The notes under the pieces are model-generated. The model was not told the origin of the DNA, did not search any database, and was given only the letters and a program-made list of their open reading frames with translations. From assembly GCF_902652985.1 (NCBI RefSeq), contig NC_047023.1:32426001-32490000 (forward strand): a stretch of DNA of 64,000 bases, read 5' to 3'. Below, one piece after another: positions 1,271 through 63,830 of this stretch. A program made the translations under genes and the position numbers. Each line of letters begins with the position of its first letter. The first letter of the stretch is position 1. The stretch comes from Pecten maximus. Its lineage: Eukaryota.

Positions 1271-3848
1271 GCCAATGGGTGAGAATGGAGTCATACACTG
1301 TATATATAGAGGTCAATGGGTGAGAATGGGGTCATACACTGTATATATGGAGGTCAATGGGTGAGAATGGGGTCATACACTGTATTTATGGAGGCCAATG
1401 GGTGAGAATGGGGTCATACACTGTATATATGGAGGTCAATGGGTGAGAATGGGGTCATACACTGTATTTATGGAGGCCAATGGGTGAGAAAGGGATCATA
1501 CACTGTAAATATGGAGACACATAGGTGAGAATGAAGCCATACACTGTATATATGGAGACCCATGGGTGAGAAATGGGTCATGCACTGTATTTATGGAGAC
1601 CCATGGGTGAGAAAGGGATCATACACTGTAAATATGGAGACCCATGGGTGAGAATGGAGTCATACATTGTATATATGGAGGCCAATGGGTGGTAATGGAG
1701 TCATACACTGTATATATGGAGGTCAATGGGTGAGAATGGGGTCATCCATGTATATATGGGGGCCAATGGGTGAGAATGGGGTCACACACTGTATATATGG
1801 AGGTCAATGGGTGAGAATGGAGTCATACACTGTATATATGGAGGCCAATGGGTGAGAATGGGATCATATACTGTATATATGGAGGCCAATGGGTGAGAAT
1901 GGGGTCACACACTGTATATATGGAGGCCAATGGGTGAGAATGGAGTCATACACTGTATATATGGAGGCCAATGGGTGAGAATGGGGTCACACACTGTATA
2001 TATGGAGGCCAATGGGTGAGAATGGAGTCATACACTGTAGATATGGAGTCCCATGGGTGAGAATGGAGTCATACACTGTATATATGGAGGTCAATGGGTG
2101 ATAATCGGGTCATACACTGTATATATGGAGGTCAATGGGTGAGAATGGGATCATATACTGTATATATGGAGACCCATGGGTGAGAATGGAGTCATACACT
2201 GTATATATGGAGGCCAATGGGTGAGAATGGAGTCATACACTGTATATATGGAGGTCAATGGGTGAGAATGGAGTCATACACTGTATATATGGAGGCCAAT
2301 GGGTGAGAATGGGGTCACACACTGTATATATGGAGACCCATGGGTGAGAATGGAGTCATACACTGTATATATGGAGACCCATGGGTGAGAATGGAGTCAT
2401 ACACTGTATATATGGAGGTAAATGGGTGAGAATGGGATCATATACTGTATATATTGAGGCCAATGGGTGAGAATCGAGTCATACACTGTATATATGGAGG
2501 TCAAAGGGTGAGAATTGAGTCATACACTGTATATATGGAGGCCAATGGGTGAGAATGGGGTCACACACTGTATATATGGAGGCCAATGGGTGAGAATGGG
2601 ATCATATACTGTATATATGGAGGCCAATGGGTGAGAATGGGGTCATACACTGTATATATGGAGGCCCATGGGTGAGAATGGAGTCATACACTGTATATAT
2701 GGAGACCCATAAGTGAGAATGGAGTCATACACTGTATATATGGAGGCCAATGGGTGAGAATGGGGTCACACACTGTATATATGGAGGCCAATGGGTGAGA
2801 ATGGGATCATATACTGTATATATGGAGGCCAATGGGTGAGAATGGGGTCATACACTGTATATATGGAGACCCATGGGTGAGAATGGAGTCATACACTGTA
2901 TATATGGAGGCCAATGGGTGAGAATGGGGTCATGCACTGTATATATGGAGGCAAATGGGTGAGAAAGGGATCATACACTATAAATATGGAGACTAATGGG
3001 TGAGAAAGGGGTCATGCACTGTATATATGGAGGCCCATGGATGAGAAAGGGGTCATACACTGTATATATGGAGACCAATGGGTGAGAATGGGGTCATACA
3101 CTGTATATATGGAGGCAAATGGGTGAGAAAGGGATCATACACAATAAATATGGAGACCAATGGGTGAGAAAGGGGTCATGCACTGTATATATGGAGGCCC
3201 ATGGATGAGAAAGGGGTCATACACTGTATATATGGAGACCCATGGGTGAGAATGGAGTCATACACTGTATATATGGAGGTCAATGGGTGATAATCGGGTC
3301 ATACACTGTAAATATGGAGGCCAGTGGGTGAGAATGGAGTCATAGACTGTATATATGGAGACCCATGGGTGAGAATGGAGTCATACACTGTATATATGGA
3401 GGCAAATGGGTGAGAAAGGGATCATACACTGTAAATATGGAGACCCATGGGTGAGAAAGGGGTCATGCACTGTATATATGGAGGCAAATGGATGAGAAAG
3501 GGATCATACACTGTAAATATGGAGACCCACGGGTGAGAAAGGGGTCATGCACTGTATATATGGAAGCCAATGGATGAGAAAGGGGTCATACAATGTACAT
3601 ATGGAGGCCAATGGGTGAGAATGGAGTCATACACTGTATATATGGAGGCCAATGGGTGAGAAAGGGGTCATACACTGTATATATGGAGACCCATGGGTGA
3701 GAAAGGGGCCATACACTGTATATATGGAGGCCAATGGGTGAGAATGGAGTCATACACTGTATATATGGAGACCCAAGGGTGAGAATGGAGTTATACACTG
3801 TATATATGGAGACCCAAGGGTGAGAACGGAGTCATACACTGTATATAT
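1271..3848. repeat. Minisatellite, 41-bp unit (GGAGGCCAATGGGTGAGAATGGAGTCATACACTGTATATAT), about 63 copies
   Basis: Unit starts recur at 1349 and 1390, giving a 41-bp period; copies are highly similar. ORFs 1667-1855 and 3586-3798 are repeat artefacts. Confidence 0.97.
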
Positions 3849-4333: not shown

Positions 4334-4760
4334 CCTGGTGGTTCCATTATCACCATCCTTAATCTTTTTTTTGTGAATGTGATAAATACAATTTGACCTA
4401 GATTTGTATGTCGGATGTCGTCATGACCAAGATTTGTATGGCGGGTGTCGTCGTGACCTAGATTTGTATGACGGGTGTCGTCGTGACCTAGATTTGTATG
4501 GCGGGTGTCGTCGTGACCTAGATTTGTATGGCGGGTGTCGTCGTGACCTAGATTTGTATGGCAGGTGTCGTCGTGACCTGGATTTGTATGACGGGTGTCG
4601 TTGATGAAATAGAAGACGCTTACCCACGGGGACGCCTGGTCTTGTTCTTCTTGTACCTTTTTAAATGTATCCATACAAATATAAATTATGTTCATAATTC
4701 ACACTGGATTTGGTCGATATAGTGTCAGAGTTACTGTTTCGTTTGCGTTTCGTTTCTCTG
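4334..4760 (+). mobile_element. Copy of a dispersed repeat (probably the 3' region of a Penelope-like element) with an internal 30-bp tandem array (TGACCTAGATTTGTATGGCGGGTGTCGTCG, about 7 copies, 4394-4600)
   Basis: The motif chain TGACCTAGATTTGTATGG...GAAGACGCT...CCTGGTCTT recurs at ~43941, ~57921, ~63622 and inverted at ~23255-23305. The 63.6-kb copy follows a degraded PLE-type RT. Confidence 0.6.
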
Positions 4761-5907
4761 TACTTTGCTTCATTATATTATCACAGTTGGTGGACTGTGA
4801 TTTAAAAAGGAGAAGCAAGGATTTATGAGTCCATGGAATTTTAAGGCATATATTATGTCACACACACCAAAAGTGCATTAGAACTGCTTGATAAAAAAAC
4901 TATACAAAATGAGGCAGCACGCGCTGTATAATAAAGATGGCATTATCTAACACAGTAAACTATCGAATTTGTCAACATGATATAACTCGATGATGACGTG
5001 ATGTAATTGAAAACGGAATAGCAACAGCATAGTTTGTATGGTGAAGATTAACTACATAGACAGGAGGGAAGACTTCATCTTATATCTATTTCTTTAAAAT
5101 AAATTAAAACTTAAAACGAGAATAAAATGTTGAAGTGAATAGTTCTCGTGTGTCCACTGAATGTATTATAAATTGGAATTGCTTCAACTATCGAAATCCT
5201 TAGATGCCGCCTTCATATAGGTTGAGGTTTGTAGACACAAAACTTCAAAAATGTTATGGAGTTATGATTGCTTTTGGGATAGCAATTTATTGTTTCAAAC
5301 TTGTGGGTCAATACAAATGATTCGCTATAAGCTGGATCCTTTATAAAAATTGAATGTCATATACACTTGATACGCTGACATGTTACTGTTAAGTTATTCG
5401 GGATAGGTGGGGAGGATGAGTCGAACATTTCCTGTTGTCGATAAATGTGTATAATTTGATGTCCATTCCTCTTCAGGTCGATTGCACACCAACGTATTAA
5501 GATATCATTGTAAATACAGACGATCTTGTACATGGATGGTGTTAGATGTTAGAGATACTGTCGAAGGCAGGTCCATGGTTCTATTAACTTTTGTTGACTT
5601 TATTTATACACTGATATACACTGACAGTGGATGCCCTAGCTACATGCCAGGTACTCCCTATCGATAAGGCGGGACCTCTCACCACAGACATGGAACACTC
5701 CTGTAACACCCTGTTGAGTGAACACGGTATATCGATGTTATACACTCTAAGTTCTTCCTCAGAGAATATACACGATCTCATATATTAACACGTTTATGAT
5801 ATACAGAAGGTGTATGATCTGGAAATATTTACATCTGATTCAAATACTTTGTAAATGATACAGAAATAAATAGAGTAGATAAAATATGTATAGAAATTCG
5901 TCCTACG

Positions 5908-6512
5908 GTTTCGTCCATTTGAGACTCGCCAGTGATGTAAGGGACATCATACAGCTGTTCGTCCTTTTGAAACTCGCCAGTGATGTAAGTGACATCATAC
6001 AGCTGTTTCGTGATTCTAGCACTAGTCAGTGATGTAAGGGACATCATACAGCTGTTTCGTCCTTTTGAGACTCGCCAGTGATGCTAGGGACATCATACAG
6101 CTGTTTCTTCCTTTTGAGACTCGTCAATGACGTAAGGGACATCATGCAGCTGTTTCGTCTTTGAAAGACTCGTCAGCGATGTAAGTGACATCATACAGCT
6201 GTATCGTCCTTTTGAGACTCGTCAATGATGTAAGGGACATCATGCAGTTGTATCGTCCTTTTGAGACTCGCCAGTGATGTAAATGACATTATACAGCTGT
6301 TTCTTCCTTTTGAGACTCGCTAGTGATGTAAGTGACATCATACAGCTTATTCGTCCTTTTGAGACTCGTCAGTGATGTAAGGGACATTATACAGCTGTTT
6401 CGTCCTTTTAGGACTCGTCAGTGATGTAAGTGACATCATACAGCTGTTTCGTCCTTCTAGCACTTGTCAGTATTGATAGGGACGCAATACAGTTCTTTGT
6501 CCTTCAAGGACT
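5908..6512 (-). ncRNA. Tandem array of about 12 hammerhead ribozyme monomers (49-bp unit)
   Basis: The minus strand of 6391-6447 reads ACAGCUGU-A/UGAUGU-CACUU-ACAUCA-CUGACGA-GUCCU-AAA-AGGAC-GAA-ACAGCUGU. This gives a canonical CUGAnGA/GAAA core, GUA cleavage triplet, 6-bp stem I, 5-bp stem II and palindromic stem III. The unit at 6146-6202 has a compensated stem II (GUCUU/AAGAC). Confidence 0.88.
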
Positions 6513-7293
6513 CAATAATTTGACCGAAAGAAGAGGAAAAGTTGTGAAAATCAAAGAGGAAAATAGAGAATGTCATACATTGATCCAATAACTCAATTAA
6601 TGTCGTAATTTTGCATAATAGATAATTAAAATAGATTAATGAATGACATATTCAGGAAAAGGTCCTAAGGAGATGTGATCAATAGGGATATCTTTCTTTA
6701 TGAAGAAACATACCCTTACAACACACTTGGACGTATTTCACCTTGGTCTTTTTAATGGCCGCCGTATGTGATTAACTTTATATTTTCTAATACTGTCCTT
6801 AATTTTGAGTTAAAATTTGAAACTTGAAAGTTCTTTAATGACTCCCGTTCTGTTTTATTAATGTGAGCACTGTACAGGTTGTGATACTGTTTATCTACCA
6901 CATATATTGCTCTACTTTACATGAAATGATATCTATGAATTTGCACTTTTAAATACATATTCCTAGTGTTAATGATTCAGTTTTAATTGACCATTCCTCG
7001 TGAACTGTCTCCATGGACAACCATTACTTGTAATTAATTGGTGTTATACTGGCAACGCGGTGTGAATCAAATCATATTTTGAAAAGAGTTCGATATGCTT
7101 AATATTTGAATGTCTTGTACGTTGAAAACCACAACTTAGTGCTGTTTGATATGAAATAAGCGGCATGTCAAACTTCGACATTATGGTAAAGATTCTCATA
7201 AATATCATATTGGTTGTGTCATATAACTTCTATCATATTTACTTTACTAACCTGAAGAAAATGTTCCAGAAGTGCCCTGAAGCTGTTTTGGGA

Positions 7294-9439: not shown

Positions 9440-11710
9440 CTAGATAAAAAGTCACACGAACGAGTTAAATAGTCACACAGGTACCAACGAGATAAAAAGT
9501 CATAATGTACCAACGAGATAAAAAAAAAGCACACATGTACCAGCGGGATAAAAAGTCATACATGTACCAACGAGATAAAAAGTCATACATGTACCAACGA
9601 GATAAAAAGTCATACATGTACCAACGAGATAAAAAGTCATAATGTACCAACGAGATAAAAAGTCACACATGTACCAACGAGATAAAAAGTCATACATGTA
9701 CCAACGAGATAAAAAGTCATACATGTACCAACGAGATAAAAATCATACATGTACCAACGAGATAAAAAGTCACACATGTACCAACGAGATAAAAAGTCAC
9801 ACATGTACCAACGAGATAAAAAATCATACATGTACCAACGAGATAAAAAGTCACACATGTACCAACGAGATAAAAAGTTACACATGTACCAACGAGATAA
9901 AAAGTCACACATGTACCAACGAGATAAAAAGTCACACATGTACCAACGAGATAAAAAGTTACACATGTACCAACGAGATAAAAAGTCACACATGTACCAA
10001 CGAGATAAAAAGTCACACATGTACCAACGAGATAAAAAGTCACACATGTACCAACGAGATAAAAAGTTACACATGTACCAACGAAATAAAAAGTTACACA
10101 TGTACCAACGAGATAAAAAGTTACACATGTACCAACGAGATAAAAAGTTACACATGTACCAACGAGATAAAAAGTCACACATGTACCAACGAGATAAAAA
10201 GTCACACATGTACCAACGAGATAAAAAGTCACACATGTACCAACGAGATAAAAAGTTACACATGTACCAACGAAATAAAAAGTCATACATGTACCAACGA
10301 GATAAGAAGTCACACATGTACCAACGAGATAAAAAGTCATACATGTACCAACGAGATAAAAAGTTACACATGTACCAACGAAATAAAAAGTCACACATGT
10401 ACCAACGAGATAAAAAGTCATACATGTACCAACGAGATAAAAAAAAAACACAGGTACCAACGAGATAAAAAGTCATACATGTACCAACGAGATAAAAAGT
10501 CACACATGTACCAACGAGATAAAAAGTCATACATGTACCAACGAGATAAAAAAAAACCACAGGTACCAACGAGATAAAATGTTACACATGTACCAACGAG
10601 ATGAAAAGTCACACATGTACCAACGAGATAAAAAGTCACACATGTACCAACGAGATAAAAAGTCATACATGTACCAACGAAATAAAAAGTTACACATGTA
10701 CCAACGAGATAAAAAGTCATACATGTACCAACGAGATAAAAAGTCATACATGTACCAACGAGATAAAAAGTTATACATGTACCAACGAGATAAAAAGTCA
10801 TACATGTACCAACGAGATAAAAAGTCACACTTGTACCAACGAGATAAAAAGTCACACATGTACCACCGAGATAAAAAGTCATACATGTACCAACGAGATA
10901 AAAAGTCACACATGTACCAACGAGATAAAAAAAACACAGGTACCAACGAGATAAAAAGTCATACATGTACCAACGAGATAAAAAGTCATACATGTACCAA
11001 CGAGATAAAAAAAACACAGGTACCAACGAGATAAAAAGTCATACATGTACCAACGAGATAAAAAGTCATACATGTACCAACGAGATAAAAAAAAACACAT
11101 GTACCAACGAGATAAAAAGTCATACATGTACCAACGAGATAAAAAGTCATACATGTACCAACGAGATAAAAAAAACACAGGTACCAACGAGATAAAAAGT
11201 CATACATGTACCAACGAGATAAAAAGTCATACATGTACCAACGAGATAAAAAAAAACACATGTACCAACGAGATAAAAAGTCACACATGTACCAACGAGA
11301 TAAAAAGTCATACATGTACCAACGGGATAAAAAGTCATAATGTACCAACGAGATAAAAAGTTACACATGTGCCAACGAGATAAAAAGTCATAATGTACCA
11401 ACGAGATAAAAAGTTACACATGTACCAACGAGATAAAAAGTCATACATGTACCAACGAGATAAAAAGTTACACATGTACCAACGAGATAAAAAGTCATAC
11501 ATGTACCAACGAGATAAAAAGTCATACATGTACCAACGAGATAAAAAGTCATAATGTACCAACGAGATAAAAAGTCACACATGTACCAACGAGATAAAAA
11601 ATCATACATGTACCAACGAGATAAGAAGTCACACATTACTAACGAGATAAAAAGTCACACATGTACCAACGAGATAAAAAGTTACACATGTACCAACGAG
11701 ATAAAAAGTC
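9440..11710. repeat. Minisatellite, 27-bp unit (CATGTACCAACGAGATAAAAAGTCACA), about 84 copies
   Basis: Clear 27-bp period. It produces the many overlapping 9-aa-repeat ORFs on both strands, which are not genes. Confidence 0.97.
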
Positions 11711-23439: not shown

Positions 23440-24760
23440 TTCGAAGCACAGTAAAATAAGACTTCAACATGTTTTCATTGATCTTTTCATTGATTGAACA
23501 ACCATGTACTTGTAACAAAAACCTTATTTCCATCATAAAAAGAAGAATTTAACCAGGCAAACCACGGAAATTACTACAGTTAATCAACTACATAGTGTCC
23601 ATCTCTCACCGCCCAATCGATCATTCCAAGTGGTCGCCAACAGAAGGCTTACATACCCATATGCTCACAGGCTATCATATTAAACCAAAATACTCTCTAA
23701 TCCATTCTAATCTATGTATATTGCATTGCAGCTAAAACGATGAAATATACTTCCCAGATACCCCGGTGAATACTTGTTTGACTGATACATAGGTTTAACA
23801 TGTATAACTTGTTCATATCTATGTTTTCTTTCTTAGTATCCATTCTGCATGAATTGCCACGTCCATGTTACTAGTATCAATGACCAGCCTTAGAAGGATG
23901 GAACCCCAATTTCATTAATCATTTTGCCAAAGTGAATTATTCATAAATTCATATTTAAAGGTACAATATACATGTGTTTTCTATGTACAACTCTCTATTT
24001 CAGTGTTTACTTGCAATGTAAACAATATAAAGATCTCTTTTTTCTTCTTCTTTTGAAATTATTCAATTTGAAAAATGTTTTTACTCTTCAGAATTTCACG
24101 AATGCTGGTATACCTTTTTGATATAGGACTATTCCTTAGCATGTCCACATTGCGTGCTACACTGATACTTATCAATAAAACATACTTCAAATAATATGTT
24201 CAAAGCCAAAGATGTATTTCTCTGAAACAATCCCGATGTTCAAACATACCAAAAACGGCCTGCTCACACGCGCTCACCAAGTCAATAGAGCATTGTAGGT
24301 GTGCACGTGTACTTGGATCACTCATACATCAAAATAGATGATGAACGAGTGGCACGTTTTTACCAAATAACCGCCCTGTCAAAGAACATTTTAAATATAT
24401 ACGAATGAAAGTGTGTAAACGAAGGTTTATTTCTGTGTAGCATATCAAAGTTAATGGTGTTCGCATAATCGATGCTAAAATTCTGGGTCTTGCTCATCCC
24501 AGAGGACTTCCAAATCAGACGATTAAACATATTTGCTTAAAAGAGTATTGACAAAAGTGTGAGGTGTTTCGCGAGTTCCTTTGAAAAAAAACCAATTGCA
24601 TCTGCCAACGGCAATTTATCCTACAGTAATTTAGCCTAAAAGTAGATTCATTCGTAACTCTGAATCAAAAATGGAACAAGTGGTCCCATTTACCATGGAA
24701 TTTGTATTAGAGAATTGATTCCCTAGGGACCCAATTACTAGTCTGGCCGCGTGAGAATAA
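23440..24760 (-). pseudogene. Decayed alpha-1,2-fucosyltransferase (GT11, FUT1/2-like) pseudogene
   Basis: Ordered motif relics across frameshifts and stops: GSLGNQ (24715-24732; cf. GRLGNQ), GHAKE*SY..IREIL (~24150-24090; cf. GYLQSWKYF..EIR) and VAIHA (23846-23860; cf. VGIHVRRGD). Further downstream: YFIV, LEWIREYF (23687-23710) and IDWAV...TV..F.WFAWLN (23547-23625; cf. D.A.L..CNH...TFGWWAAWL). Confidence 0.6.
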
Positions 24761-30215: not shown

Positions 30216-30942
30216 GACGTCATTGTTTGAAATCTAAATGCTACGATAAGTGTGAATAAACGTTCTGTTTTGCAACGAAATACTGTCGATTTATTGATGT
30301 CCGCGTGCTCATTCAGCGAATAATTTAACATCATAAACGTACAAATGTAGTATTATCCATGTGAGTAAAGCTAATACTATAATTTCACTCCCATTACATT
30401 TCAGTCAATGTTGTCAGAGATACTTTTGCATGTATCATTTGCGGTTAGCATATCATCCTTAAAGAACTACAATGCGTTTTATTTTATTTATTTATTTATT
30501 TTTTTGTATTTGTTTTGTTGTTGTTTTTTCCAATACCGTCTCTATTTTTATCTTAAGCTATTTCTCACAAATAACTGTGTTTAATGACAACTAATCAACA
30601 CACTTAAGATGTGTTTGGGAAATTGGAACTCATTTTAGGCTCTCCGTATCGTCATAAAACATGACAAGATTAAATCATATTGTTATGGTAATTAAGGACA
30701 AATCGTCAAATAAAAACGAGTAAATTTAGGTCATCATTCACTATCCATAAATCTGAATGCTCACATGCACGTAAAGTTCTCTTGAAAACTAATATTGAAA
30801 ATTACGACATTTATTGAAAGTATGGGTCATTTGTTCATCCCCGCTGATATTTTACAATGCGTTTGACAAACATTCACAATCGTTTCAATGAAGCATACGT
30901 TTTTGAAGTTAAGTCATGGTCGACTCCCATGACTATTGTAGG

Positions 30943-31992
30943 TCCTTCACTGATGGGTTGTAGAAGGACGTATTCCTTCACTGATGGGTTGTAGAAGGAC
31001 GTATTCCTTCACTGATGGACTGTAGAAGGACGAATTCTTTCACTGATGGGTTGTAGACGGACGAATTCCTTCACTGATGGGTTGTAGAAGGACGAATTCC
31101 TTCACTGATGAGTTGTAGAAGGACGTATTCCTTCACTGATGGGTTGTAGACGGACGAATTCCTTCACTGATGGGTTGTAGAAGGACGTATTCCTTCACTG
31201 ATGGGTTGTAGAAGGACGAATTCTTTCACTGATGGGTTGTAGAAGGACGTATTCCTTCACTGATGGACTGTAGAAGGACGAATTCTTTCACTGATGGGTT
31301 GTAGACGGACGAATTCCTTCACTGATGGGTCGTAGACGGACCCAATTCCTTCACTGATGAGTTGTAGAAGGACGTATTCCTTTATTGATGGGTTGTAGAC
31401 GGACGTATTTCTTTATTGATGGTTGCAGACGGACGAATTCCTTTATTGATGGGTTGTAGACGGACGAATTCCTTTATTGATGGGTTGTAGACGGACAAAG
31501 TCCTTTATTGATGGGTTGTAGACGGACGAATTCCTTCTCTGATGGGCCGTAGACGGACGAATTCCTTCTCTGATGGGTCGTAGACGGGCGAATTCCTTCT
31601 CTGATGGGTCGTAGACGGACGAACTCCTTCTCTGATGGGTCGTAGACGGACGAATTCCTTCTCTGATGGGTTGTAGACGGACGAATTACTTCACTGATGG
31701 GTCGTAGACGGACGAATTCCTTCACTGTGGGTTGTAGAAGGACGAATAAATTCACTTATGGGTTTCAATAAGACGAATGCCTTCAATGATGGATTGTAGA
31801 CGGACGTATTTCTTTATTGATGGGTTGTAGACGGACGAATTCCTTCACTGATGGGTTGTAGACGGACGAATTCCTTCTCTGATGGGTCGTAGACGGACGA
31901 ATTCCTTCTCTGATGGGTCATAGACGGACGAATTCCTTCACTGATGGGTTGTAGAAGGACGAATTCCTTCACTGATGGGTTCTAGAAAGACG
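30943..31992 (+). repeat. Minisatellite, 31-bp unit (TTCCTTCACTGATGGGTTGTAGAAGGACGAA), about 34 copies, derived from a hammerhead ribozyme core plus stem II
   Basis: Period 30961 to 30992. The unit aligns to CACTGACGAGTCCTAGAAGGACGAA of the ribozyme arrays, and the 3' flank (31971-32040) aligns with the 3' flank of the 37.8-kb array (38076-38150). Confidence 0.9.
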
Positions 31993-32813
31993 ACTCAGCC
32001 TTATGGTGTAGTTAGGTTTATTTCGGCTACTGTATCTTACTTATTATTTTGTTGTGAACGGTGATGATATCCTGTATGCCTTGTAAACAATAATTTGATA
32101 AATATACATTTTGTGCACCATAACTACTGTATGCAGTATTTTATTTTGAATCATTTCCTGTTAGGTCAATATATATATATATATATGTCACCATGTCACC
32201 TGACATTGAGGTGATAATCTAAACTATTAATTTATACTGACAACGGAATATTTGTTAAATGGTACTGGGTGGAGATATTAACGGAATAAGCATAACTCCC
32301 ATTAATTTTGGAAGCTTACGAGAAGTAAGCACCCGTAATAGATCGGCTATAGAAAGCCTCTCACGACATTAGATATTCATTCATAAACATGTGTATTGTT
32401 CAGCGTGACACCATGCAGGGTACCCGAATCTAGATTAATATCTATGATATAAACTGCCTAGGTGACAAATGGTTGGTGTGAGAAAATATACTGATCCATA
32501 GCTGAATTTATTTGGTCATGCACGTCATGTTTTATCTGGAACATTAAGCCACGTCGCTTTATCTATAGGTGTTGTTATTGAGATCACGTACTAAAGTCTC
32601 TGATACTGATTGGACAACCACATTGTGGTGAAACACTCTCATCTGTCAACAGAATCATGACAACCATTTTCTAAATGACAATTGTCTCATATCATGCGTT
32701 CCTTCAACATAGAGAAAATAATGATTTAAAAAATAAATACATAAAAAATAGATGCTGCATCAGTAATTCGATTCTATCTCTCATTCTATCTGGTATTAAC
32801 TGGTATTATATAT

Positions 32814-34535: not shown

Positions 34536-37345
34536 GGTTTACTTGGACTAACTAGTGTGAGAGGTCTGATGTCCTGGTTTATTTGGACTAACTAGTGTGA
34601 GAGGTCTGATGTCCTGGTTTACTTGGACTAACTAGTGTGAGAGGTCTGATGTCCTGGTTTACTTGGACTAACTAGTGTGAGAGGTCTGATGTCCTGGTTT
34701 ACTTGGACTAACTAGTGTGAGAGGTCTGATGTCCTGGTTTACTTGGACTAACTAGTGTGAGAGGTCTGGTGTCCTGGTTTACTTGGACTAACTAGTGTGA
34801 GAGGTTTGATGTCCTGGTTTTCTTGGACTAACTAGTGTGAGATGTCTGATGTCCTGGTTTTCTTGGACTAACTAGTGTGAGAGGTCTGATGTCCTGGTTT
34901 ACCTGGACTAACTAGTGTGAGAGGTCTGATGTCCTGGTTTACCTGGACTAACTAGTGTGAGAGGTCTGATGTCCTGGTTTACTTGGACTAACTAGTGTGA
35001 GAGGTCTAATGTCCTGGTTTATTTCGACTAACTAGTGTGAGAGGTCTAATGTCCTGGTTTATTTGGACTAACTAGTGTGAGAGGTCTGATGTCCTGGTTT
35101 ATTTGGACTAACTAGTGTGAGAGGTCTGACGTCCTGGTTTTACTTGGACTAACTAGTGTGAGAGGTCTGATGTCCTGGTTTTCTTGGACTAACTAGTGTG
35201 AGAGGTCTGATGTCCTGGTTTACTTGGACTAACTAGTGTGAGAGGTCTGATGTCCTGGTTTACTTGGACTAACTAGTGTGAGAGGTCTGATGTCCTGGTT
35301 TACTTGGACTACCTAGTGTGAGAGGTCTGATGTCCTGGTTTTACTTGGACTAACTAGTGTGAGAGGTCTGATGTCCTGGTTTACTTGGACTAACTAGTGT
35401 GAGAGATCTGATGTCCTGGTTTACTTGGACTAACTAGTGTGAGAGGTCTGATGTCCTGGTTTACTTGGACTAACTAGTGTGAGAGGTCTGATGTCCTGGT
35501 TTACTTGGACTAACTAGTGTGAGAGGTCTGATGTCCTGGTTTACTTGGACTAACTAGTGTGAGAGATCTGATGTCCTGGTTTACTTGGACTACCTAGTGT
35601 GAGAGATCTGATGTCCTGGTTTATTTGGACTAACTAGTGTGAGAGATCTGATGTCCTGGTTTATTTGGACTAACTAGTGTGAGAGGTCTGATGTCCTGGT
35701 TTACTTGGACTAACTAGTGTGAGAGGTCTGATGTCCTGGTTTACTTGGACTAGCTAGTGTGAGAGGTCTGATGTCCTGGTTTACTTGGACTAACTAGTGT
35801 GAGAGGTCGGATGCCCTAGTTTACTTGGACTAACTAGTGTGAGAGGTCTGATGTTCTGGTTTACTTGGACTAACTAGTGTGAGAGGTCTGATGTCCTGGT
35901 TTACTTGGACTAACTAGTGTGAGAGGTCTGATGTCCTGGTTTACTTGGACTAACTAGTGTGAGAGGTCTGATGTCCTGGTTTATTTGGACTAACTAGTGT
36001 GAGAGATCTGATGTTCTGGTTTACTTGGACTAACTAGTGTGAGAGGTCTGATGTCCTGGTTTACTTGGACTAACTAGTGTGAGAGATGTGATGCCCTGGT
36101 TTACTTGGACTAACTAGTGTGAGAGGTCTGATGTCCTGGTTTACTTGGACTAACTAATGTGAGAGGTCTGATGTCCTGGTTTAGTTGGACTAACTAGTGT
36201 GAGAGGTCTGGTGTCCTGATTTACTTGGACTAACTAGTGTGAGAAGTCTGATGTCCTGGTTTATTTGGACTAACTAGTGTGAGAGGTCTGACGTCCTAGT
36301 TTACTTGGACTAACTAGTGTGAGAGGTCTGATGTCCTGGTTTATTTTGACTAACCAGTGTGAGATATCTGATGCCCTGGTTTACTTGGACTAACTAGTGT
36401 GAGAGGTCTGATGTCCTGGTTTACTTGGACTAACTAGTGTGAGAGGTCTGATGTCCTGGTTCACTTGGACTAACTAGTGTGAGAGGTCTGATGTCCTGGT
36501 TCACTTGGACTAACTAGTGTGAGAGGTCTGATGTCCTGGTTCACTTGGACTAACTAGTGTGAGAGGTCTGGGGCCTGGTTTATTTGGACTAACTAGTGTG
36601 AGAGGTCTAATGTCCTGGTTTATTTGGACTAACTAGTGTGAGAGGTCTGATGTCCTGGTTCACTTGGACTAACTAGTGTGAGAGGTCTGGGGCCTGGTTT
36701 ATTTGAACTAACTAGTGTGAGAGATCTGATGTCCTGGTTTACTTGGACTAACTAGTGTGAGAGGTCTGATGTCCTGGTTTACTTGGACTAACTAGTGTGA
36801 GAGGTCTGATGTCCTGGTTTACTTGGACTAACTAGTGTGAGAGGTCTGATGTCCTAGTTTACTTGGACTAACTAGTGTGAGAGGTCTGATGTCCTGGTTC
36901 ACTTGGACTAACTAGTGTGAGAGGTCTGGGGCCTGGTTTATTTGGACTAACTAGTGTGAGAGGTCTGATGCCCTGGTTTATTTGGACTAACTAGTGTGAG
37001 AGGTCTAATGTCCTGGTTTATTTGGACTAACTAGTGTCAGAGGTCTGATGTCCTGGTTTACTTGGACTAACTAGTGTCAGAGGTCTGACGTATCTAGTGT
37101 GAGAGGTCTGATGTCCTGGTTTATTTGGACTAACTAGTGTGAGAGGTCTGATGCCCTGGTTTATTTGGACTAACTAGTGTGAGAGGTCTAATGTCCTGGT
37201 TTATTTGGACTAACTAGTGTGAGAGGTCTGATGTCCTGGTTTATTTGGACTAACTAGTGTGAGAGGTCTGATGTCCTGGTTTACTTGGACTAACTAGTGT
37301 GAGAGGATTGTGACACAGATCTGATGCCCTTGTTTACTTGGACTA
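34536..37345. repeat. Minisatellite, 40-bp unit (GGTTTACTTGGACTAACTAGTGTGAGAGGTCTGATGTCCT), about 70 copies
   Basis: Very homogeneous 40-bp period. Confidence 0.97.
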
Positions 37346-37796
37346 CTTAGCCTGCGACGAATATGACATAGATCGGATTTAATATTAAAAAAAACTCTGA
37401 TCAAGGTTCGCACGTAACAGGATAATACAAAGACATACAAGATATGTACACATTCCAATATTAATTAAATAACATTGCATCATACAGCTGTCACTCGTTA
37501 GTGATGATAAGGGTCTGGAATGTTTATACCTTTGTGGCGACGAAGGACACTCAAATTTAGTTGGAAAGCGTGTTAAAATCTGATGGAGAGGTACAATTTC
37601 CCTACATAACTTTATATGTTTCGTAATCTTTAATAATTCAAAACAATATCAAGTACGTGTGTTCTGTACGTGTTATGTAGCTTCTAAAACGCTGTATGGT
37701 AGGACTTCCCATACAAACATTCAAAGAAAGATTTCGAAGTTTAGTTTTTGTCGCCACCTATGATCAACACTTTATGCTTTTATCAAACTGTCGCAC

Positions 37797-38113
37797 AGAG
37801 GGACGAAACATGCATGATGTCCCTAGGATCATTGACGAGCCCTAGAAGGGCGAAACACCTTTATGATGTCTTTAGAATAACTGACGAGTCCTAGAAGGAT
37901 GAAACACATGTATGATGTTCCTAACATCATTGACGAGAACTAGAACGACGAGACAGCTGTATGGTGCCTCTTACATTTCTGACGAGTCCTAGAAGGTCGA
38001 AACACATGTATGTTGTCCATAGCATCATTGGCGAGCCCTAGAAGGACGAAAACCTGTATGATATCGCTAATATCTCTGGTGGGTCCTAGAACGACGAAAC
38101 ACCCGTATGGTGC
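37797..38113 (+). ncRNA. Second, more diverged hammerhead-monomer array (about 6.5 units of 48-49 bp)
   Basis: Units read (C/T)TGACGA-GTCCT-AGA-AGGAC-GAAAC-ACATGTA-TGATG...CATCA. GAAAC-like motifs fall at ~37805, 37852, 37901, 37950, 37999, 38048 and 38096. One unit has a compensatory stem II (GCCCT/AGGGC, ~37839-37851). Confidence 0.78.
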
Positions 38114-38579
38114 AGTTTAATTCACTTAGGCTCCACTGTATCTAACTCTTAATTTGCTTGGTAATGTGCACGTATCAGGTGTGCCTTTTGTATAATCCTT
38201 CTGGTGGACTGATCAATGCCAAAATCTGGATAGTAGGCTGCAAGAGATCAATATCTCAATCAATTTCATTATTTTCAATACTTGTTTTCAAAAGTTCTCT
38301 ATGAAACGTGTATATTCAGAACCGCGCCAATATTCAAATGAATTAAAATGTGACAGACAGGTCACAATAACTCTCGAGGACTCTGTGGAAAACCATCATC
38401 AATCCTTGATTACAAAAATCACAGTAAAAACCATTTTAGACATTTTTCAAATTCATGTATTCACCCTGAGAGTCTTTTCCCATGGTCATTTACAAAAATG
38501 TTTAATCTACCGTGAATATCGTAAATAATATGCCTTTATACCCTATAATGCAATCCCACGAAACATTTTAGGTTAAGGA

Positions 38580-43904: not shown

Positions 43905-44290
43905 TCCGTCGTCACCACCGTAGGTCTCAATTTGAAAATGTGACCTAGATTTGTATGGCGGGTGTCGTCGTGACCTAGATTTGTACGGCGTGTGTCGTCG
44001 TGAACTAGATTTGTATGGCGGGTATCGTCGTGACCTAGATTTGTATGGCGGGTGTCGTCATGACCTAGATTTGTATGGCGGGTGTCGTCGTGACCTAGAT
44101 TTGCATGGCGGGTGTTGTTGAAGAAGCAAAAGACGTTTATCCTTCCGAAAACATATTTCCTTATTCTCCTTTTTGGACATATACAAATGCATATGCATAT
44201 TAATAGTGTTTTTGTCCTGGTTTTATCGACGTTTAATTGGAATTTTGATTTCACTTTAATGTCAGTGTTTTTCTACGACTCATCAATGTG
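43905..44290 (+). mobile_element. PLE-associated 3' repeat copy with a 30-bp tandem array (about 6 units, 43941-44118)
   Basis: Same TGACCTAGATTTGTATGGCGGGTGTCGTCG unit as 4394-4600, followed by GAAGCAAAAGACGTTTATCCTTCCG. Confidence 0.65.
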
Positions 44291-58080: not shown

Positions 58081-59695
58081 TTTTCATTGTCATAATCGTA
58101 ATTAAGTAGATATTGACGATAGTTTTCATTGTCATAATCGTAATTAGGTAGATATTGACAATGACAATGACAATATTTTATTCTCATAAACATATAAAGT
58201 GTAGAGAATTATATACATACAAAATTTGTACAGGACATATGATATAATACATCGATACATTTGTTAAGCAAGAGATTATCTTAAATATTGTTGAGTCGTA
58301 TACTTATTTCTTTAATTAATTTCACAAGTGATTTCAATTCATCGTCTACTACAAAATTAAAAAGTGTATTAAATTTGAATGTACTTGGTCTTTCATAATA
58401 GTATCTAGATATATATTTTTTTCTGTTTAATGCTATTTGATGATCGCTGCAATTAAATAGATAATGGAATTCGTCTCCTATTTCATTCAGGTTACACAGA
58501 CTACAGATTCTATTTTCTCTTGGGATGTTATTCCATCTTCCGTATTCGATTGGTAATTTAATGTTACAAGTTCGAAATTTACAATAAGAATTAGCTAGCT
58601 TAGGAGGGAGGTCAAGTAGATATTTTTCTAAACTTAAATCATGTTTATAAATTCTGTAATTGGTCCCTTTCGGAGAATTGAAAACGTCATTTTTCCAATT
58701 ACATATGAACAAATTTCTTAGGGTATGAAAAACAGTATTTTTTAAGCAGCGTATACTAGTAAATTCATGGTTTTCAAAAACATCTAATAAATTACATTCT
58801 TCAAAAATGTTTTTAATATAGTTAGACCATTGAGCATTATAATGTCTTAAAATTTTGAAAAATTTGTTGCTCAATTTATTATGAGTTGAGACCATCATTT
58901 TGGCCCAAAATCCAATCATACGAACTTTTATATTTATACTTAATGGAAACCTTCCCAATTCTCCATATATCATAAAGTTTGGTGTAGATGTTTTTAATCT
59001 AAGGATATGTTTACAGAATTTCAAATGTAGACGTTCTAAGAGCTTGGTGTCACAAAACCCCCAAACCTCACAGCCATATAGTATAATCGGTTTGATTGCT
59101 TTATCAAAAATATCCATTTTACAATCGATGGACAGATTATGATTTCTGCATTTTGAAATAGCGCCATACATGGCCCTAAGGCCTTTTTCATGTAATTGTT
59201 TGATATTCAAATGTGTAAAACCATTTCTAGTGAAACAATTCCCGAGATATTTAAAATTTTTCACAATTTCTAAATTATTGCCATCATAGGTGAACTGTAT
59301 ATTTCGTGACACCGTTCCTCTCCCAAAAACCATTATCTTAGTCTTGTCAATGTTAACTTTAAGATGCCACAATTTTGAGTAGGTGTGAAATACGTTAAGT
59401 TGTGTTTGTAAATCTTCTACTGACTCTGCAAGTAGAATGGTATCATCGGCATACAACATTATATACAACTTGAGATAGTTTTCGTTGTCATAATCGTAAT
59501 GAGGTAGATATTGACGATAGTTTTCATTGTCATAATCGTAATGAGGTAGATATTGACGATAATTTTTATTGTCATAATCGTAATGAGGTAGATATTGACG
59601 ATAGTTTTCATTGTCATAATCGTAATGAGGTAGATATTGACGATAGTTTTCATTGTCATAATCGTAATTAGGTAGACATTGACGACAGTTTTCTG
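58081..59695. repeat. 42-bp minisatellite (GATAGTTTTCATTGTCATAATCGTAATGAGGTAGATATTGAC) split by a LINE insertion
   Basis: About 2 units at 58081-58159 and about 5 units at 59474-59695; the register resumes exactly across the insertion. Confidence 0.92.
58160..59473 (-). mobile_element. Young 5'-truncated RTE-X-like LINE with an uninterrupted RT C-half plus CCHC ORF
   Basis: LYADD, FKYLG, LYGCEVWG, GELGRFPL, IEYGRW and CSLC..IGDEFHYLFNC with no stops down to 58281. AATAAA plus (TTGTCA)n tail at 58160-58185. Confidence 0.93.
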
Positions 59696-60346
59696 CCAAG
59701 TCATTAGTATCGTACCAATAATAATTACCTACCGATTATCAACATATCAATCGCATTTCTCGCGTGACATTCAAAGTGTGAAGAAGTATCTTAGATCCTG
59801 TGCGTTGAGCAGCCAAGAACTTCAATAAAATGTGGTTTAAATCATGTGTATTGCTTGATAGTCTTTGTAATGAAACACCAATTACGTTACATTGCGCCAA
59901 TCATTCACTGTATCAATCAATGTCTTATTAAAACATGTGCATTACTGACTATAGATCTAGGTTAAACAGTTTTTAATGGTCGATTACAATTATTCCTTAC
60001 ACTAAATGGCATAGTTTCAGTTAATCAATACGTTCTCGCCGATTTCAATTCTTAAATTCCTTCGCCCGGCACTGTGTCAAGGTCATGGCCAATGCCATCA
60101 CTGTAACGGCCGTAATGATTTTCATTGTTCTACAATAAATCATCATCCCGATTATTGGACAGTTTATAAAGCTGACATTGGCCAAGGTCATTTCGTTGAT
60201 ATCTGTCGGTATTACCAAATCATCTGTGAAACAAATACCCTTGTATGTATATAATAAATTATGATATCCGAGTCGGAACTGTTAAGTGGGTAAATAGGAA
60301 TCGGGAACAGATTGAAAGTTTGGTATTGTATACATGGTAGTGTACA

Positions 60347-63238: not shown

Positions 63239-63830
63239 TTACATCTATCGTTACTCACTGCATGTGATAGAAATGTGGAAACCTTTGGAAATGAGTGTTG
63301 GAAAGTTGCATTCTTGACGCCTGCTGTTTGAGAACAGGAAAGGGATGTACAGTATATAAACCAAATCTGCACAATTGAAACATCCGGGATCTACATATTA
63401 TTTCTACATGCTCCCTACCTCTTCCTTCGTAATACCCATGTCCACGGACATGATATTGATTACTCGATATGCAGGTTGATGAGGATCATGGGAAGTTCAA
63501 TTATCTTATTTTTAGATATTCCTTGTGCGATATCAAGTCAGATGTGTTTGGTGTTTGTCGAAGTTGGTAGTGGTTCCGTTGTCACCACATAACTTCAAGT
63601 CCTCCTTTTGAGAATGTAACTTGACCTAGATTTGACCTAGATTTGTATGGTGAGTCGCGCCTCTGAAGCAGAAGACGCTATGCACTATCGACACCTGGTC
63701 TTATTCCCTTCGGAAGTCTCCATACAAATCTATACTATTGTTCATATTTTGCCTTCGCTTTATTGATTTTGAGCTAGAATTACGGTTTCGTTATTGTATC
63801 GGTATTCTCGTTTCAGAATTACCAAGCTCG
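62640..63830 (+). mobile_element. Degraded Penelope-like (Naiad-type) RT C-terminal fragment and 3' region
   Basis: FLVHYVEFG..PFLADMF, FRYI..NDVLS (62785-62820) and ICPQELEIK..ANIDLYL (62855-62932) resemble FRYIDDVLS / IYPxELEIK / ASYLDL. A RYA relic lies at ~63465, followed by the TGACCTAGATTTGTATGG repeat. The fragment is interrupted by a (GAAA)n-containing segment. Confidence 0.55.

What the first reader, a model, noticed from the sequence alone, without database searches (positions are those of the whole stretch)
5908..6512. A satellite whose 49-bp monomer is a complete hammerhead ribozyme
Seen in sequence: on the minus strand each 49-nt unit consists only of hammerhead parts: stem I (UGAUGU/ACAUCA), core CUGACGA, stem II, GAAA and a GUA cleavage site. 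Units at 6391-6447 and 6146-6202 are fully canonical; predicted cleavage for the former lies between 6439 and 6438. Stem II varies while keeping pairing (GUCCU/AGGAC, GUCUU/AAGAC, GUCU/GGAC). Other units carry core lesions (CUGGCGA, UUGACGA, GAUA). Established knowledge: hammerheads occur in Penelope-like element repeats, retrozymes and some animal satellites (newt, schistosome, cave cricket), normally embedded in monomers several-fold longer. Inference: this is a cargo-free, minimal 'ribozyme-only' repeat. A read-through transcript would cut itself into ~49-nt multiples with 5'-OH and 2',3'-cyclic phosphate ends, compatible with circularisation and RT-driven re-integration.
Basis: partly seen in the sequence, partly recalled or inferred. 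Interest (0 to 1): 0.93.

Follow-up and report, generated by a model that had tools for sequence, protein, structure and literature searches.

The report
Decayed hammerhead-ribozyme minisatellite in scallop
A 49-base tandem repeat in the king scallop genome really does spell one self-cutting hammerhead RNA per unit. This copy is mostly dead, and the arrays grew by ordinary DNA duplication of the ribozyme part of an older, roughly 390-base mobile element, so they are not a free-living 49-base element.

Summary
Window 5901-6512 (minus strand) holds 12 head-to-tail 49-nt units, each made only of hammerhead parts. Two units (6391-6447, 6146-6202) are canonical. They fold as hammerheads and score 46.7 and 39.8 bits on Rfam Hammerhead_3, just under its cut-off of 48.5. 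The other ten carry core lesions.

The array is a worn member (85% identical to the family consensus) of a family spread across the genome of Pecten maximus. There are at least 2,794 intact-core units, a canonical consensus, and members that pass Rfam Hammerhead_1.

The "cargo-free, RT-reintegrated" reading is not supported:
- Arrays sit at a fixed place and phase between a conserved 5' arm and 3' arm of a non-coding carrier.
- Carrier copies with a single ribozyme exist.
- Arrays of 50-70 units are fixed for catalytically dead cores.
- A 31-bp derivative lacking the cleavage site expanded in the same carrier, in this window.

Expansion is therefore DNA-level. The ribozyme probably served the carrier's own RNA. 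RNA-seq contigs contain the units, but cleavage is untested.

Other agents of this scan reached the same reading on other pieces of this genome. I class it as a new variant of a known kind, of moderate interest.

The parts
5901..6512 (-). Array W1: 12 units of 49 nt (6487-5901) plus a leading partial unit (6512-6488). Each unit is one hammerhead. Mean identity to the family consensus is 85.5%.
6391..6447 (-). Canonical hammerhead in type III form. It uses the core of unit 2, with helix III formed by the ACAGCUGU palindromes of units 1 and 2. Predicted cleavage is between 6439 and 6438.
   Evidence: Rfam RF00008 46.7 bits; own model R1 88.9 bits; hammerhead MFE fold, z -3.99; junction audit
6146..6202 (-). 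Second canonical hammerhead (core of unit 7, stem II GUCUU/AAGAC). Predicted cleavage is between 6194 and 6193. Its own downstream site is GCA, which is dead.
   Evidence: RF00008 39.8 bits; fold
6578..6622 (-). Trace of the carrier's 5' arm upstream of W1. No 3' arm is recognisable downstream.
   Evidence: 25 of 29 identical to the 5' arm of the 31-bp-satellite carrier, local alignment z 7.0; weak 5'-arm HMM hit at 6613-6578
37797..38109 (+). Array W2: 6.4 units of the same family on the other strand. Identity to consensus is 81.6%, the array consensus carries C3U, and no unit is intact.
38108..38200 (+). Carrier 3' arm of W2 (TGGTGCAGTTTAATTCA...TTTTGTATAATCC).
   Evidence: Shared with L034, L035, L036 and L050; at least 40 dispersed genomic matches
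37650..37796 (+). Carrier 5' arm of W2. It is partial and lacks the GAAATCCGATATCGAAAATTATGAAATTGATTGAAT module.
   Evidence: alignment with other 5' arms
37415..37690 (-). Solo carrier copy with one internally deleted hammerhead (ATCATCACTAACGAGT/GACAGCTGTA TGATGC), lying head-to-head with W2.
   Evidence: 5'-arm HMM hit at 37662-37521 and 3'-arm HMM hit at 37466-37419; sequence
38215..38430 (-). Extra inverted copy of the carrier 5' arm abutting the end of W2.
   Evidence: 5'-arm HMM E 1.8e-17; sequence
30734..32095 (+). The same carrier with a 31-bp satellite: 5' arm 30734-30942, 34 units at 30943-31993, 3' arm 32004-32095. The unit is a truncated hammerhead (CACUGAUGGGUUGUAGACGGACGAA plus UCCUU) with no helix III and no cleavage site.
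   Evidence: TRF; 5'-arm HMM E 1.5e-11; 3'-arm HMM E 2.4e-5; sequences

Best explanation
W1 is an old, largely inactivated array of a hammerhead minisatellite family found across the genome of Pecten maximus. The ancestral object is a non-coding, dispersed mobile element of roughly 320-390 bp. It consists of a 5' arm, one canonical metazoan type I hammerhead (6-bp helix I, 4-5-bp helix II, 2-bp helix III capped by the palindromic loop AGCU) and a 3' arm of about 95 nt. In many copies the 49-bp ribozyme module (44-nt ribozyme plus a 5-nt linker) was duplicated in place by DNA-level processes such as slippage or unequal exchange. This gave arrays of 6 to more than 70 units that homogenise locally. 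In a tandem transcript each unit can fold in two ways. It can form a type I ribozyme with its neighbour's 5' strand. Or, more stably, it can form a type III ribozyme whose 8-bp helix III is made by the ACAGCUGU palindromes of two adjacent units. Intact arrays should therefore cut themselves into 49-nt multiples with 5'-OH and 2',3'-cyclic phosphate ends. At this locus only units 2 and 7 keep an intact core, so at most 2-3 of 11 junctions could be cut. Shown here: the sequence anatomy, the family size, the carrier arms, the dead-core arrays, and the presence of units in RNA-seq contigs. Inferred: self-cleavage, a role of the ribozyme in the carrier's own propagation, and the DNA-level mechanism of expansion.
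For: Hammerhead identity. Family members pass the Rfam Hammerhead_1 cut-off at 21 scored places. The consensus of 628 units from 22 arrays is a perfect hammerhead. Its MFE fold is the hammerhead, and it is kept in the dimer. Family size: the exact 38-nt consensus occurs 294 times and the intact-core pattern 2,794 times, against 0 for reversed controls. It is found on all chromosomes. Carrier: the 5' and 3' arms are shared among arrays. Arrays always start near ACAUCAC and end at UGAUG. Solo copies lie at L047:1777-2096 and at window 37415-37690. The arms are dispersed as single copies. DNA-level expansion: each array has private fixed changes. L045 (50 units) and L036 are fixed for G12A. L047 (70 units) and W2 are fixed for C3U. 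A 31-bp truncated derivative expanded in the same carrier. Core positions diverge as much as loops, 0.086 against 0.07-0.115. Pairing across copies is no better than in column shuffles, 0.357 against 0.362. Past RNA-level constraint: in stems, wobble-preserving transitions outnumber breaking ones 503 to 179, while unpaired positions show no such bias. Units are about 90% identical to the consensus while arms of the same elements are 66-76% identical pairwise. Transcription: 181-208 contigs per run in three RNA-seq libraries carry the units.
Against: No cleavage, small-RNA or circular-RNA data could be obtained, because contigs cannot show ends. No listed RNA run holds this locus, and DNA carry-over in RNA libraries cannot be excluded. 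Covariation is weak: 2 compensatory pairs, and 125 of 500 shuffles score as high. Window copies miss the Rfam gathering score. The carrier's class, exact ends and target-site duplications were not resolved. The 3' arm is recognisable by HMM in only 6 of 22 arrays and is absent at W1. The fact that units are better conserved than arms is not fully explained by in-place duplication alone.
Confidence: 0.8

Rival explanations
1. The 49-nt ribozyme is itself the mobile unit. Read-through RNA cuts itself into 49-mers, these circularise, and rolling-circle reverse transcription re-integrates multimers to create the arrays.
For: The unit has no spacer, and the tandem context gives a stable hammerhead fold. 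Units occur in RNA-seq contigs. Retrozyme circRNAs are known in a mussel (PMC7229834).
Against: Arrays sit at one fixed place and phase inside a carrier with conserved arms. Arrays of 50-70 units are fixed for dead cores, and such units could not release themselves. The 31-bp derivative without a cleavage site expanded just as well. No RT ORF is associated, apart from one abutting LINE.
Confidence: 0.06
2. The carrier is a solo non-LTR retrozyme, that is, a derivative of a Penelope-like pseudo-LTR mobilised in trans by PLE reverse transcriptase. The 49-bp arrays are its decay products. This refines the best explanation and does not replace it.
For: The hammerhead has the canonical metazoan type I architecture of retrozymes (PMC4209133). 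The carrier size of about 320-390 bp equals the mussel retrozyme monomer of 350-390 bp. Solo monomers are common in retrozyme families, which are reported to derive from PLE pLTRs (bioRxiv 10.64898/2026.07.22.740005). The carrier is non-coding with low GC.
Against: No tandem carriers were seen in 22 loci or in the genome hit lists. No hammerhead remnant lies upstream of the 5' arm. The 3' arm is not a repeat of the start of the 5' arm. No PLE ORF is nearby. Homology to P. maximus PLE pLTRs could not be tested.
Confidence: 0.4
3. An ordinary minisatellite that resembles a hammerhead by chance, with no ribozyme history.
For: Nothing in the window reaches an Rfam gathering score. Covariation is not significant. 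The genome is full of 27-55-bp minisatellites.
Against: All 13 invariant core positions and all three helices are present in the consensus of 628 units. 21 family members pass Rfam Hammerhead_1. The core pattern gives 2,794 hits against 0 for the reversed control. Stems show a strand-specific bias towards wobble-preserving changes.
Confidence: 0.02
4. Host-domesticated arrays. The tandem ribozymes would act as RNA-processing or transcript-terminating modules, or as a source of small RNAs, for neighbouring genes.
For: Units occur inside RNA-seq contigs up to 3.6 kb long. Two conserved vertebrate hammerheads are thought to derive from such repeats (PMC3088659).
Against: Genomic copies decay neutrally and many arrays are fixed for dead cores. 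This locus is 10 of 12 dead. No gene association was seen.
Confidence: 0.03

Closest known systems
Metazoan non-LTR retrozymes with type I hammerheads (coral, mussel, axolotl; Cervera & de la Pena 2020, PMC7229834)
   Same: Same ribozyme architecture: 6-bp helix I, 4-5-bp helix II, short helix III with a palindromic loop. Both are non-coding, low in GC, dispersed and tandem, and transcribed. The carrier size of about 320-390 bp matches the mussel monomer.
   Different: Here the repeated unit is the 49-bp ribozyme alone, not a 150-400-bp monomer carrying one ribozyme. The carrier itself was seen only as single copies. circRNA has not been shown.
Hammerhead-bearing satellites and SINE-like repeats: newt satellite 2, Schistosoma Sm-alpha, Dolichopoda pDo500 (PMC2837043; references in PMC4209133)
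   Same: Repetitive DNA whose transcripts carry a type I hammerhead with an unstable helix III that is stabilised when two copies pair.
   Different: Those monomers are 330-500 bp with one ribozyme each. Here ribozymes abut with no spacer, and adjacent units supply each other's helix III.
Minimal hammerheads of Penelope-like element pseudo-LTRs that act as dimers (Cervera & de la Pena 2014, PMC4209133)
   Same: Dimer logic: a palindromic helix III region lets two nearby copies form an extended helix III.
   Different: PLE min-HHRs lack helix III and loop 3, have a long helix II (6-8 bp) and a short helix I, and flank an RT/GIY-YIG ORF. None of this holds here.
Double-hammerhead processing in viroid-like RNAs (ASBVd; Forster et al. 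1988, cited in PMC4209133)
   Same: Cleavage is favoured in multimers and disfavoured in monomers, because helix III is stable only between two copies.
   Different: Those are replicating RNAs of 250-400 nt. This is genomic DNA with 49-nt spacing.

Membership tests
Hammerhead ribozyme (Rfam clan CL00010) | Invariant core C3 U4 G5 A6 N7 G8 A9, G12 A13 A14, A15.1-U16.1, H17, and a G10.1-C11.1 pair | tested here: met
   Met in units 2 and 7 of W1 and in the family consensus. Not met in the other 10 units.
Hammerhead ribozyme (Rfam clan CL00010) | Three helices around the core, forming a three-way junction | tested here: met
   The MFE and centroid folds of 6391-6447(-) and of the consensus are the hammerhead junction, z -3.99.
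Hammerhead ribozyme (Rfam clan CL00010) | Score at or above the curated gathering threshold | tested here: inconclusive
   The best window copies reach 46.7 bits against 48.5 for RF00008. The same family passes RF00163 (34 bits or more) at 21 scored genomic places. RF00008 is never passed.
Hammerhead ribozyme (Rfam clan CL00010) | Covariation supporting the helices | tested here: inconclusive
   97.4% of cells are paired, but only 2 pairs have compensatory changes, and 125 of 500 shuffles score as high. C28-G34 to U-A occurs in 3 arrays (Fisher 1e-6) and U6-A12 to C-G in 6 arrays. The family is too uniform for this test.
Hammerhead ribozyme (Rfam clan CL00010) | Mg2+-dependent self-cleavage after H17 | not testable with these tools
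   Needs in vitro transcription. RNA contigs cannot show ends.
Metazoan non-LTR retrozyme | Type I hammerhead of canonical metazoan architecture | tested here: met
   compared with the description in PMC4209133.
Metazoan non-LTR retrozyme | Tandem repeats of a 150-400-bp monomer, each with one hammerhead | tested here: not met
   The repeated unit is 49 bp. Carriers occur as single dispersed copies, with no upstream hammerhead remnant. Solo monomers are, however, known in retrozyme families.
Metazoan non-LTR retrozyme | Expressed as small circular RNAs | not testable with these tools
   Only Logan contigs were available.
Penelope-like element pseudo-LTR | Repeat flanks an ORF with RT and GIY-YIG endonuclease | tested here: not met
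   ORFs of 150 aa or more in 20 loci and the window give one LINE ORF2 (APE+RT) and one RVT_1 fragment, with no GIY-YIG.
Penelope-like element pseudo-LTR | Min-HHR architecture: no helix III, long helix II, short helix I | tested here: not met
   Helix I is 6 bp, helix II 4-5 bp, and helix III 2 bp plus a 4-nt loop.
Minisatellite DNA evolving in concert | Head-to-tail units with array-specific fixed variants | tested here: met
   Private consensus changes occur in 15 of 22 arrays, including dead cores. TRF reports 98-bp higher-order periodicity in W2.

The most novel reading that the evidence does not exclude
Intact arrays elsewhere in the genome (for example the runs of perfect consensus units on contig 6 near 21.85 Mb) may be transcribed and cut themselves into 49-nt RNAs. 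A tRNA ligase could close these into circles. They would be the smallest natural hammerhead circRNAs, about three times smaller than any described retrozyme RNA. They might feed back on array length through rolling-circle reverse transcription.
Probability: 0.1. Interest if true: 0.8.

Novelty: new variant of a known kind. Interest (0 to 1): 0.4.

Why it matters
Animal hammerheads are known in repeats of 150-500 bp. This family shows the limiting case: the ribozyme module alone becomes the satellite unit, and neighbouring units supply each other's helix III. It gives a natural, spacer-free concatemer on which to test the rule that hammerheads are active in multimers and quiet as monomers, and to test how small a self-processed RNA can be in vivo. 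It also documents how a satellite is born from an internal module of a mobile element. In one window, the same carrier holds a 49-bp array and a 31-bp ribozyme-dead derivative. For annotation, it explains thousands of near-threshold hammerhead hits in a bivalve genome.

Tried and rejected
1. Terminal inverted repeats of the carrier. An inverted 5'-arm copy abuts W2, but no other array shows one, so it is a neighbouring copy and not a TIR.

2. The carrier as a 1.3-mer tandem, with the 3' arm repeating the start of the 5' arm. Similarity seen by eye was not significant (36 local alignments, all z < 2).

3. A hammerhead remnant upstream of the 5' arm. There were no HMM hits at E <= 10 in 9 copies.

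4. Purifying selection on genomic copies. The core is as diverged as the loops, and pairing is no better than in shuffles.

5. Significant covariation. Not found.

6. Locus-specific RNA evidence. No listed RNA run holds the stretch.

7. Literature. No paper in the searchable library describes a hammerhead-only minisatellite or hammerheads in scallops. One search was wasted on "scalloped hammerhead" sharks.

8. A fuzzy-regex unit finder timed out and was replaced by nhmmer.

For that reason carrier termini, target-site duplications and PLE pLTR homology were not resolved.

Full report
**Observation.** Tandem Repeats Finder reports a 49-bp array at 5908-6471: 11.5 copies, 84% matches. Read on the minus strand and cut after each GUA, it gives 12 units from 6487 to 5901, preceded by a partial unit at 6512-6488. 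Each unit has this layout:
- UGAUGU, a 5-nt loop, ACAUCA (helix I)
- CUGACGA
- a 4-5-bp hairpin (helix II)
- GAAA
- the palindrome ACAGCUGU (helix III)
- A, the nucleotide before the cut.

**Rfam and folding.** No Rfam family reaches its gathering score in the window. In E-value mode, Hammerhead_3 matches 6392-6446(-) at 46.7 bits (cut-off 48.5, E 5.3e-9), 6147-6201 at 39.8 bits and 6049-6103 at 35.9 bits. The 57-mer 6391-6447(-) folds exactly into the hammerhead junction, both as MFE and as centroid structure: -19.4 kcal/mol, z -3.99.

**State of this array.** A junction-by-junction audit shows that only units 2 and 7 keep all core positions. The junctions 6439|6438 and 6194|6193 are competent in the type III fold. 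Junction 6390|6389 is weakly competent in the type I fold. The other eight junctions are blocked by these lesions: CUGGCGA, UUGACGA, CUAGCGA, CUGACUA, GAUA, a GAAU lesion (A15.1 to U), GGAAG, a 1-nt deletion, or a GCA site.

**Two folds for one unit.** In a tandem transcript the same unit can fold in two ways. It can act as a 44-nt type I ribozyme whose helix I pairs ACAUCA of unit n with UGAUGU of unit n+1. Or it can act as a 57-nt type III ribozyme whose 8-bp helix III is made by the palindromes of two neighbouring units. The second fold is the MFE for the consensus and persists in the dimer. This follows the principle already described for metazoan type I hammerheads with a short helix III and a palindromic loop, which become active when a second copy is nearby (PMC4209133).

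**Genome and family size.** The assembly has 918,306,378 bp in 3,983 contigs. These are exactly the figures published for Pecten maximus (PMC7191990). The family is large:
- A 294-nt piece of the array finds at least 235 matches on many chromosomes.
- The exact 38-nt consensus core occurs 294 times, and a spacing-fixed intact-core pattern 2,794 times. Reversed controls give 0 in both cases.
- Rfam Hammerhead_1 is passed at 21 scored places, all of which are members of this family or look like it.

I fetched 20 arrays of 10 kb each and extracted 628 units. Their consensus is a flawless hammerhead. 171 of 518 in-register units (33%) are fully canonical. W1 is among the most diverged arrays, at 85.5% identity to the consensus. 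The second array in the window, W2 (37797-38109, plus strand), is at 81.6% and has no intact unit.

**The arrays are not free-standing.** Upstream flanks of at least 10 of 22 arrays share a 5' arm. It runs ...TATACACRTGTTCT..GAAATCCGATATCGAAAATTATGAAATTGATTGAAT..CCCCATTGACATTTTGACATTTCTTTCGACC..GTCGCCACC..GTATCAACAC. Downstream flanks share a 3' arm of about 95 nt, GCAGTTTAATTCA...CTGTATCTAACTCTCAATTTG...TTGTACAATCC. Arrays always begin near ACAUCAC and end at UGAUG, which is the type I permutation.

Carrier copies with a single ribozyme exist:
- L047:1777-2096.
- Window 37415-37690(-), which has an internally deleted ribozyme.
- A probable third copy: minus-strand 5'-arm and 3'-arm HMM hits in L034 at 7720-7550 and 7458-7393. 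Its ribozyme was not inspected.

The arms are dispersed as single copies, with at least 40 matches for the 3' arm and at least 29 for the 5' arm at 75-90% identity. They show no carrier-length tandem spacing. W1 itself keeps only a short but significant trace of the 5' arm at about 6578-6622 and has no 3' arm.

**Expansion happens at the DNA level.** Four lines of evidence point this way:
- Every array has private fixed changes. L045 (50 units) and L036 are fixed for G12A. L047 (70 units) and W2 are fixed for C3U. Large arrays therefore grew from catalytically dead units.
- In this same window a 31-bp satellite (30943-31993, 34 units) lies between the same 5' arm (HMM E 1.5e-11) and 3' arm (E 2.4e-5). 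Its unit is a hammerhead that has lost helix III, the cleavage site and the 5' strand of helix I.
- Across genomic copies the core is as diverged as the loops (0.086 against 0.07-0.115).
- The fraction of units with all helix I and II pairs formed equals the column-shuffled expectation (0.357 against 0.362).

After insertion, then, copies decay neutrally.

**Traces of an RNA-level past.**
- In stems, transitions that keep a wobble pair (C>U, A>G) outnumber those that break pairing (G>A, U>C) by 503 to 179. Counted once per array, the figures are 95 to 65. Unpaired positions show no such bias.
- Two pairs show compensatory changes in several arrays.
- Units are about 90% identical to their consensus, while arms of the same elements are only 66-76% identical pairwise.

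I infer that the ribozyme was under constraint in the source elements, as expected if it processed the carrier's RNA. Formal covariation on a model-fitted alignment is not significant. The family is too uniform for that test to speak either way.

**Relation to known elements.** No ORF with RT plus GIY-YIG lies near any of the 20 arrays or in the window. One array abuts a LINE ORF2, and the window holds an RT fragment. The ribozyme architecture also differs from PLE min-HHRs. So this is not a PLE pseudo-LTR repeat. The carrier's size and its ribozyme resemble mussel retrozyme monomers, and solo retrozyme monomers derived from PLE pLTRs have been reported. However, I found no tandem carriers, so I leave retrozyme membership open (confidence 0.4).

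**Transcription.** No listed RNA run holds this locus. I laid the contigs of three RNA-seq libraries and one probable RNA run on a stretch containing a solo carrier, a unique spacer, a 5' arm and three units. This gave 181-208 contigs per RNA library on the units, none on the spacer and almost none on the arms. Some contigs span three or more units or embed units in RNAs of up to 3.6 kb. This shows that units are present in RNA libraries. It does not show strand, ends or cleavage, and DNA carry-over of a high-copy repeat cannot be excluded.

**Novelty.** Published animal hammerhead repeats have monomers of 150-500 bp. I found no description of a satellite made only of ribozymes, nor of hammerheads in scallops, in the searchable library. 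That library omits many subscription papers. Other agents of this scan reported the same family on at least seven other pieces of this genome and read it the same way. I reached my reading before seeing their notes. I class the finding as a new variant of a known kind. At this locus it is a relic.

Noticed in passing
window 30734-32095 (+): A 31-bp satellite (34 units) sits in the same carrier as the hammerhead arrays. Its unit is a truncated hammerhead without a cleavage site. Only the last unit keeps a GUA-like site before the 3' arm.
   Followed up: yes
window 37415-37690 (-) and 38215-38430 (-): A solo carrier with an internally deleted hammerhead lies head-to-head with W2, and an extra inverted 5' arm abuts the 3' end of W2. 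That makes three carrier copies within 1 kb, which may indicate insertion into or beside own copies.
   Followed up: partly
window 4394-4601, 43940-44115, 63621-63645: The same 30-bp minisatellite unit (GTGACCTAGATTTGTATGGCGGGTGTCGTC) recurs at three places in the window.
   Followed up: no
window 1271-3848, 9459-11710, 34536-37306 and others: The window is unusually rich in minisatellites of 27-55 bp, in about 15 arrays, some with more than 60 units. Whether each sits in its own carrier element was not checked.
   Followed up: no
window 58284-59735 (-): An ORF of 484 aa with a partial RVT_1 reverse-transcriptase domain (E 1.9e-8). Its element class was not determined.
   Followed up: partly
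L046:1146-3920 (+): A LINE ORF2 of 925 aa (Exo_endo_phos plus RVT_1) directly abuts a hammerhead array of 49 units in opposite orientation. That array has no 3' arm.
   Followed up: partly
L034, L035, L036, L050, window W2: Hammerhead units are much better conserved (about 90% to consensus, array consensus 96-100%) than the 3' arms of the same elements (66-76% pairwise). In-place duplication alone does not fully explain this.
   Followed up: partly
RNA contigs laid on L047:2677-2796 (table 5c): Contigs from three runs share a 27-nt insert (ATTGGGACCCCTCAAAAAACGGGGGAA) between two hammerhead units. This is an array variant not seen in the fetched loci.
   Followed up: no
window 23865-23904 (+): A weak isolated match to the 49-nt unit (nhmmer E 5e-5), possibly a very old solo ribozyme relic.
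   Followed up: no
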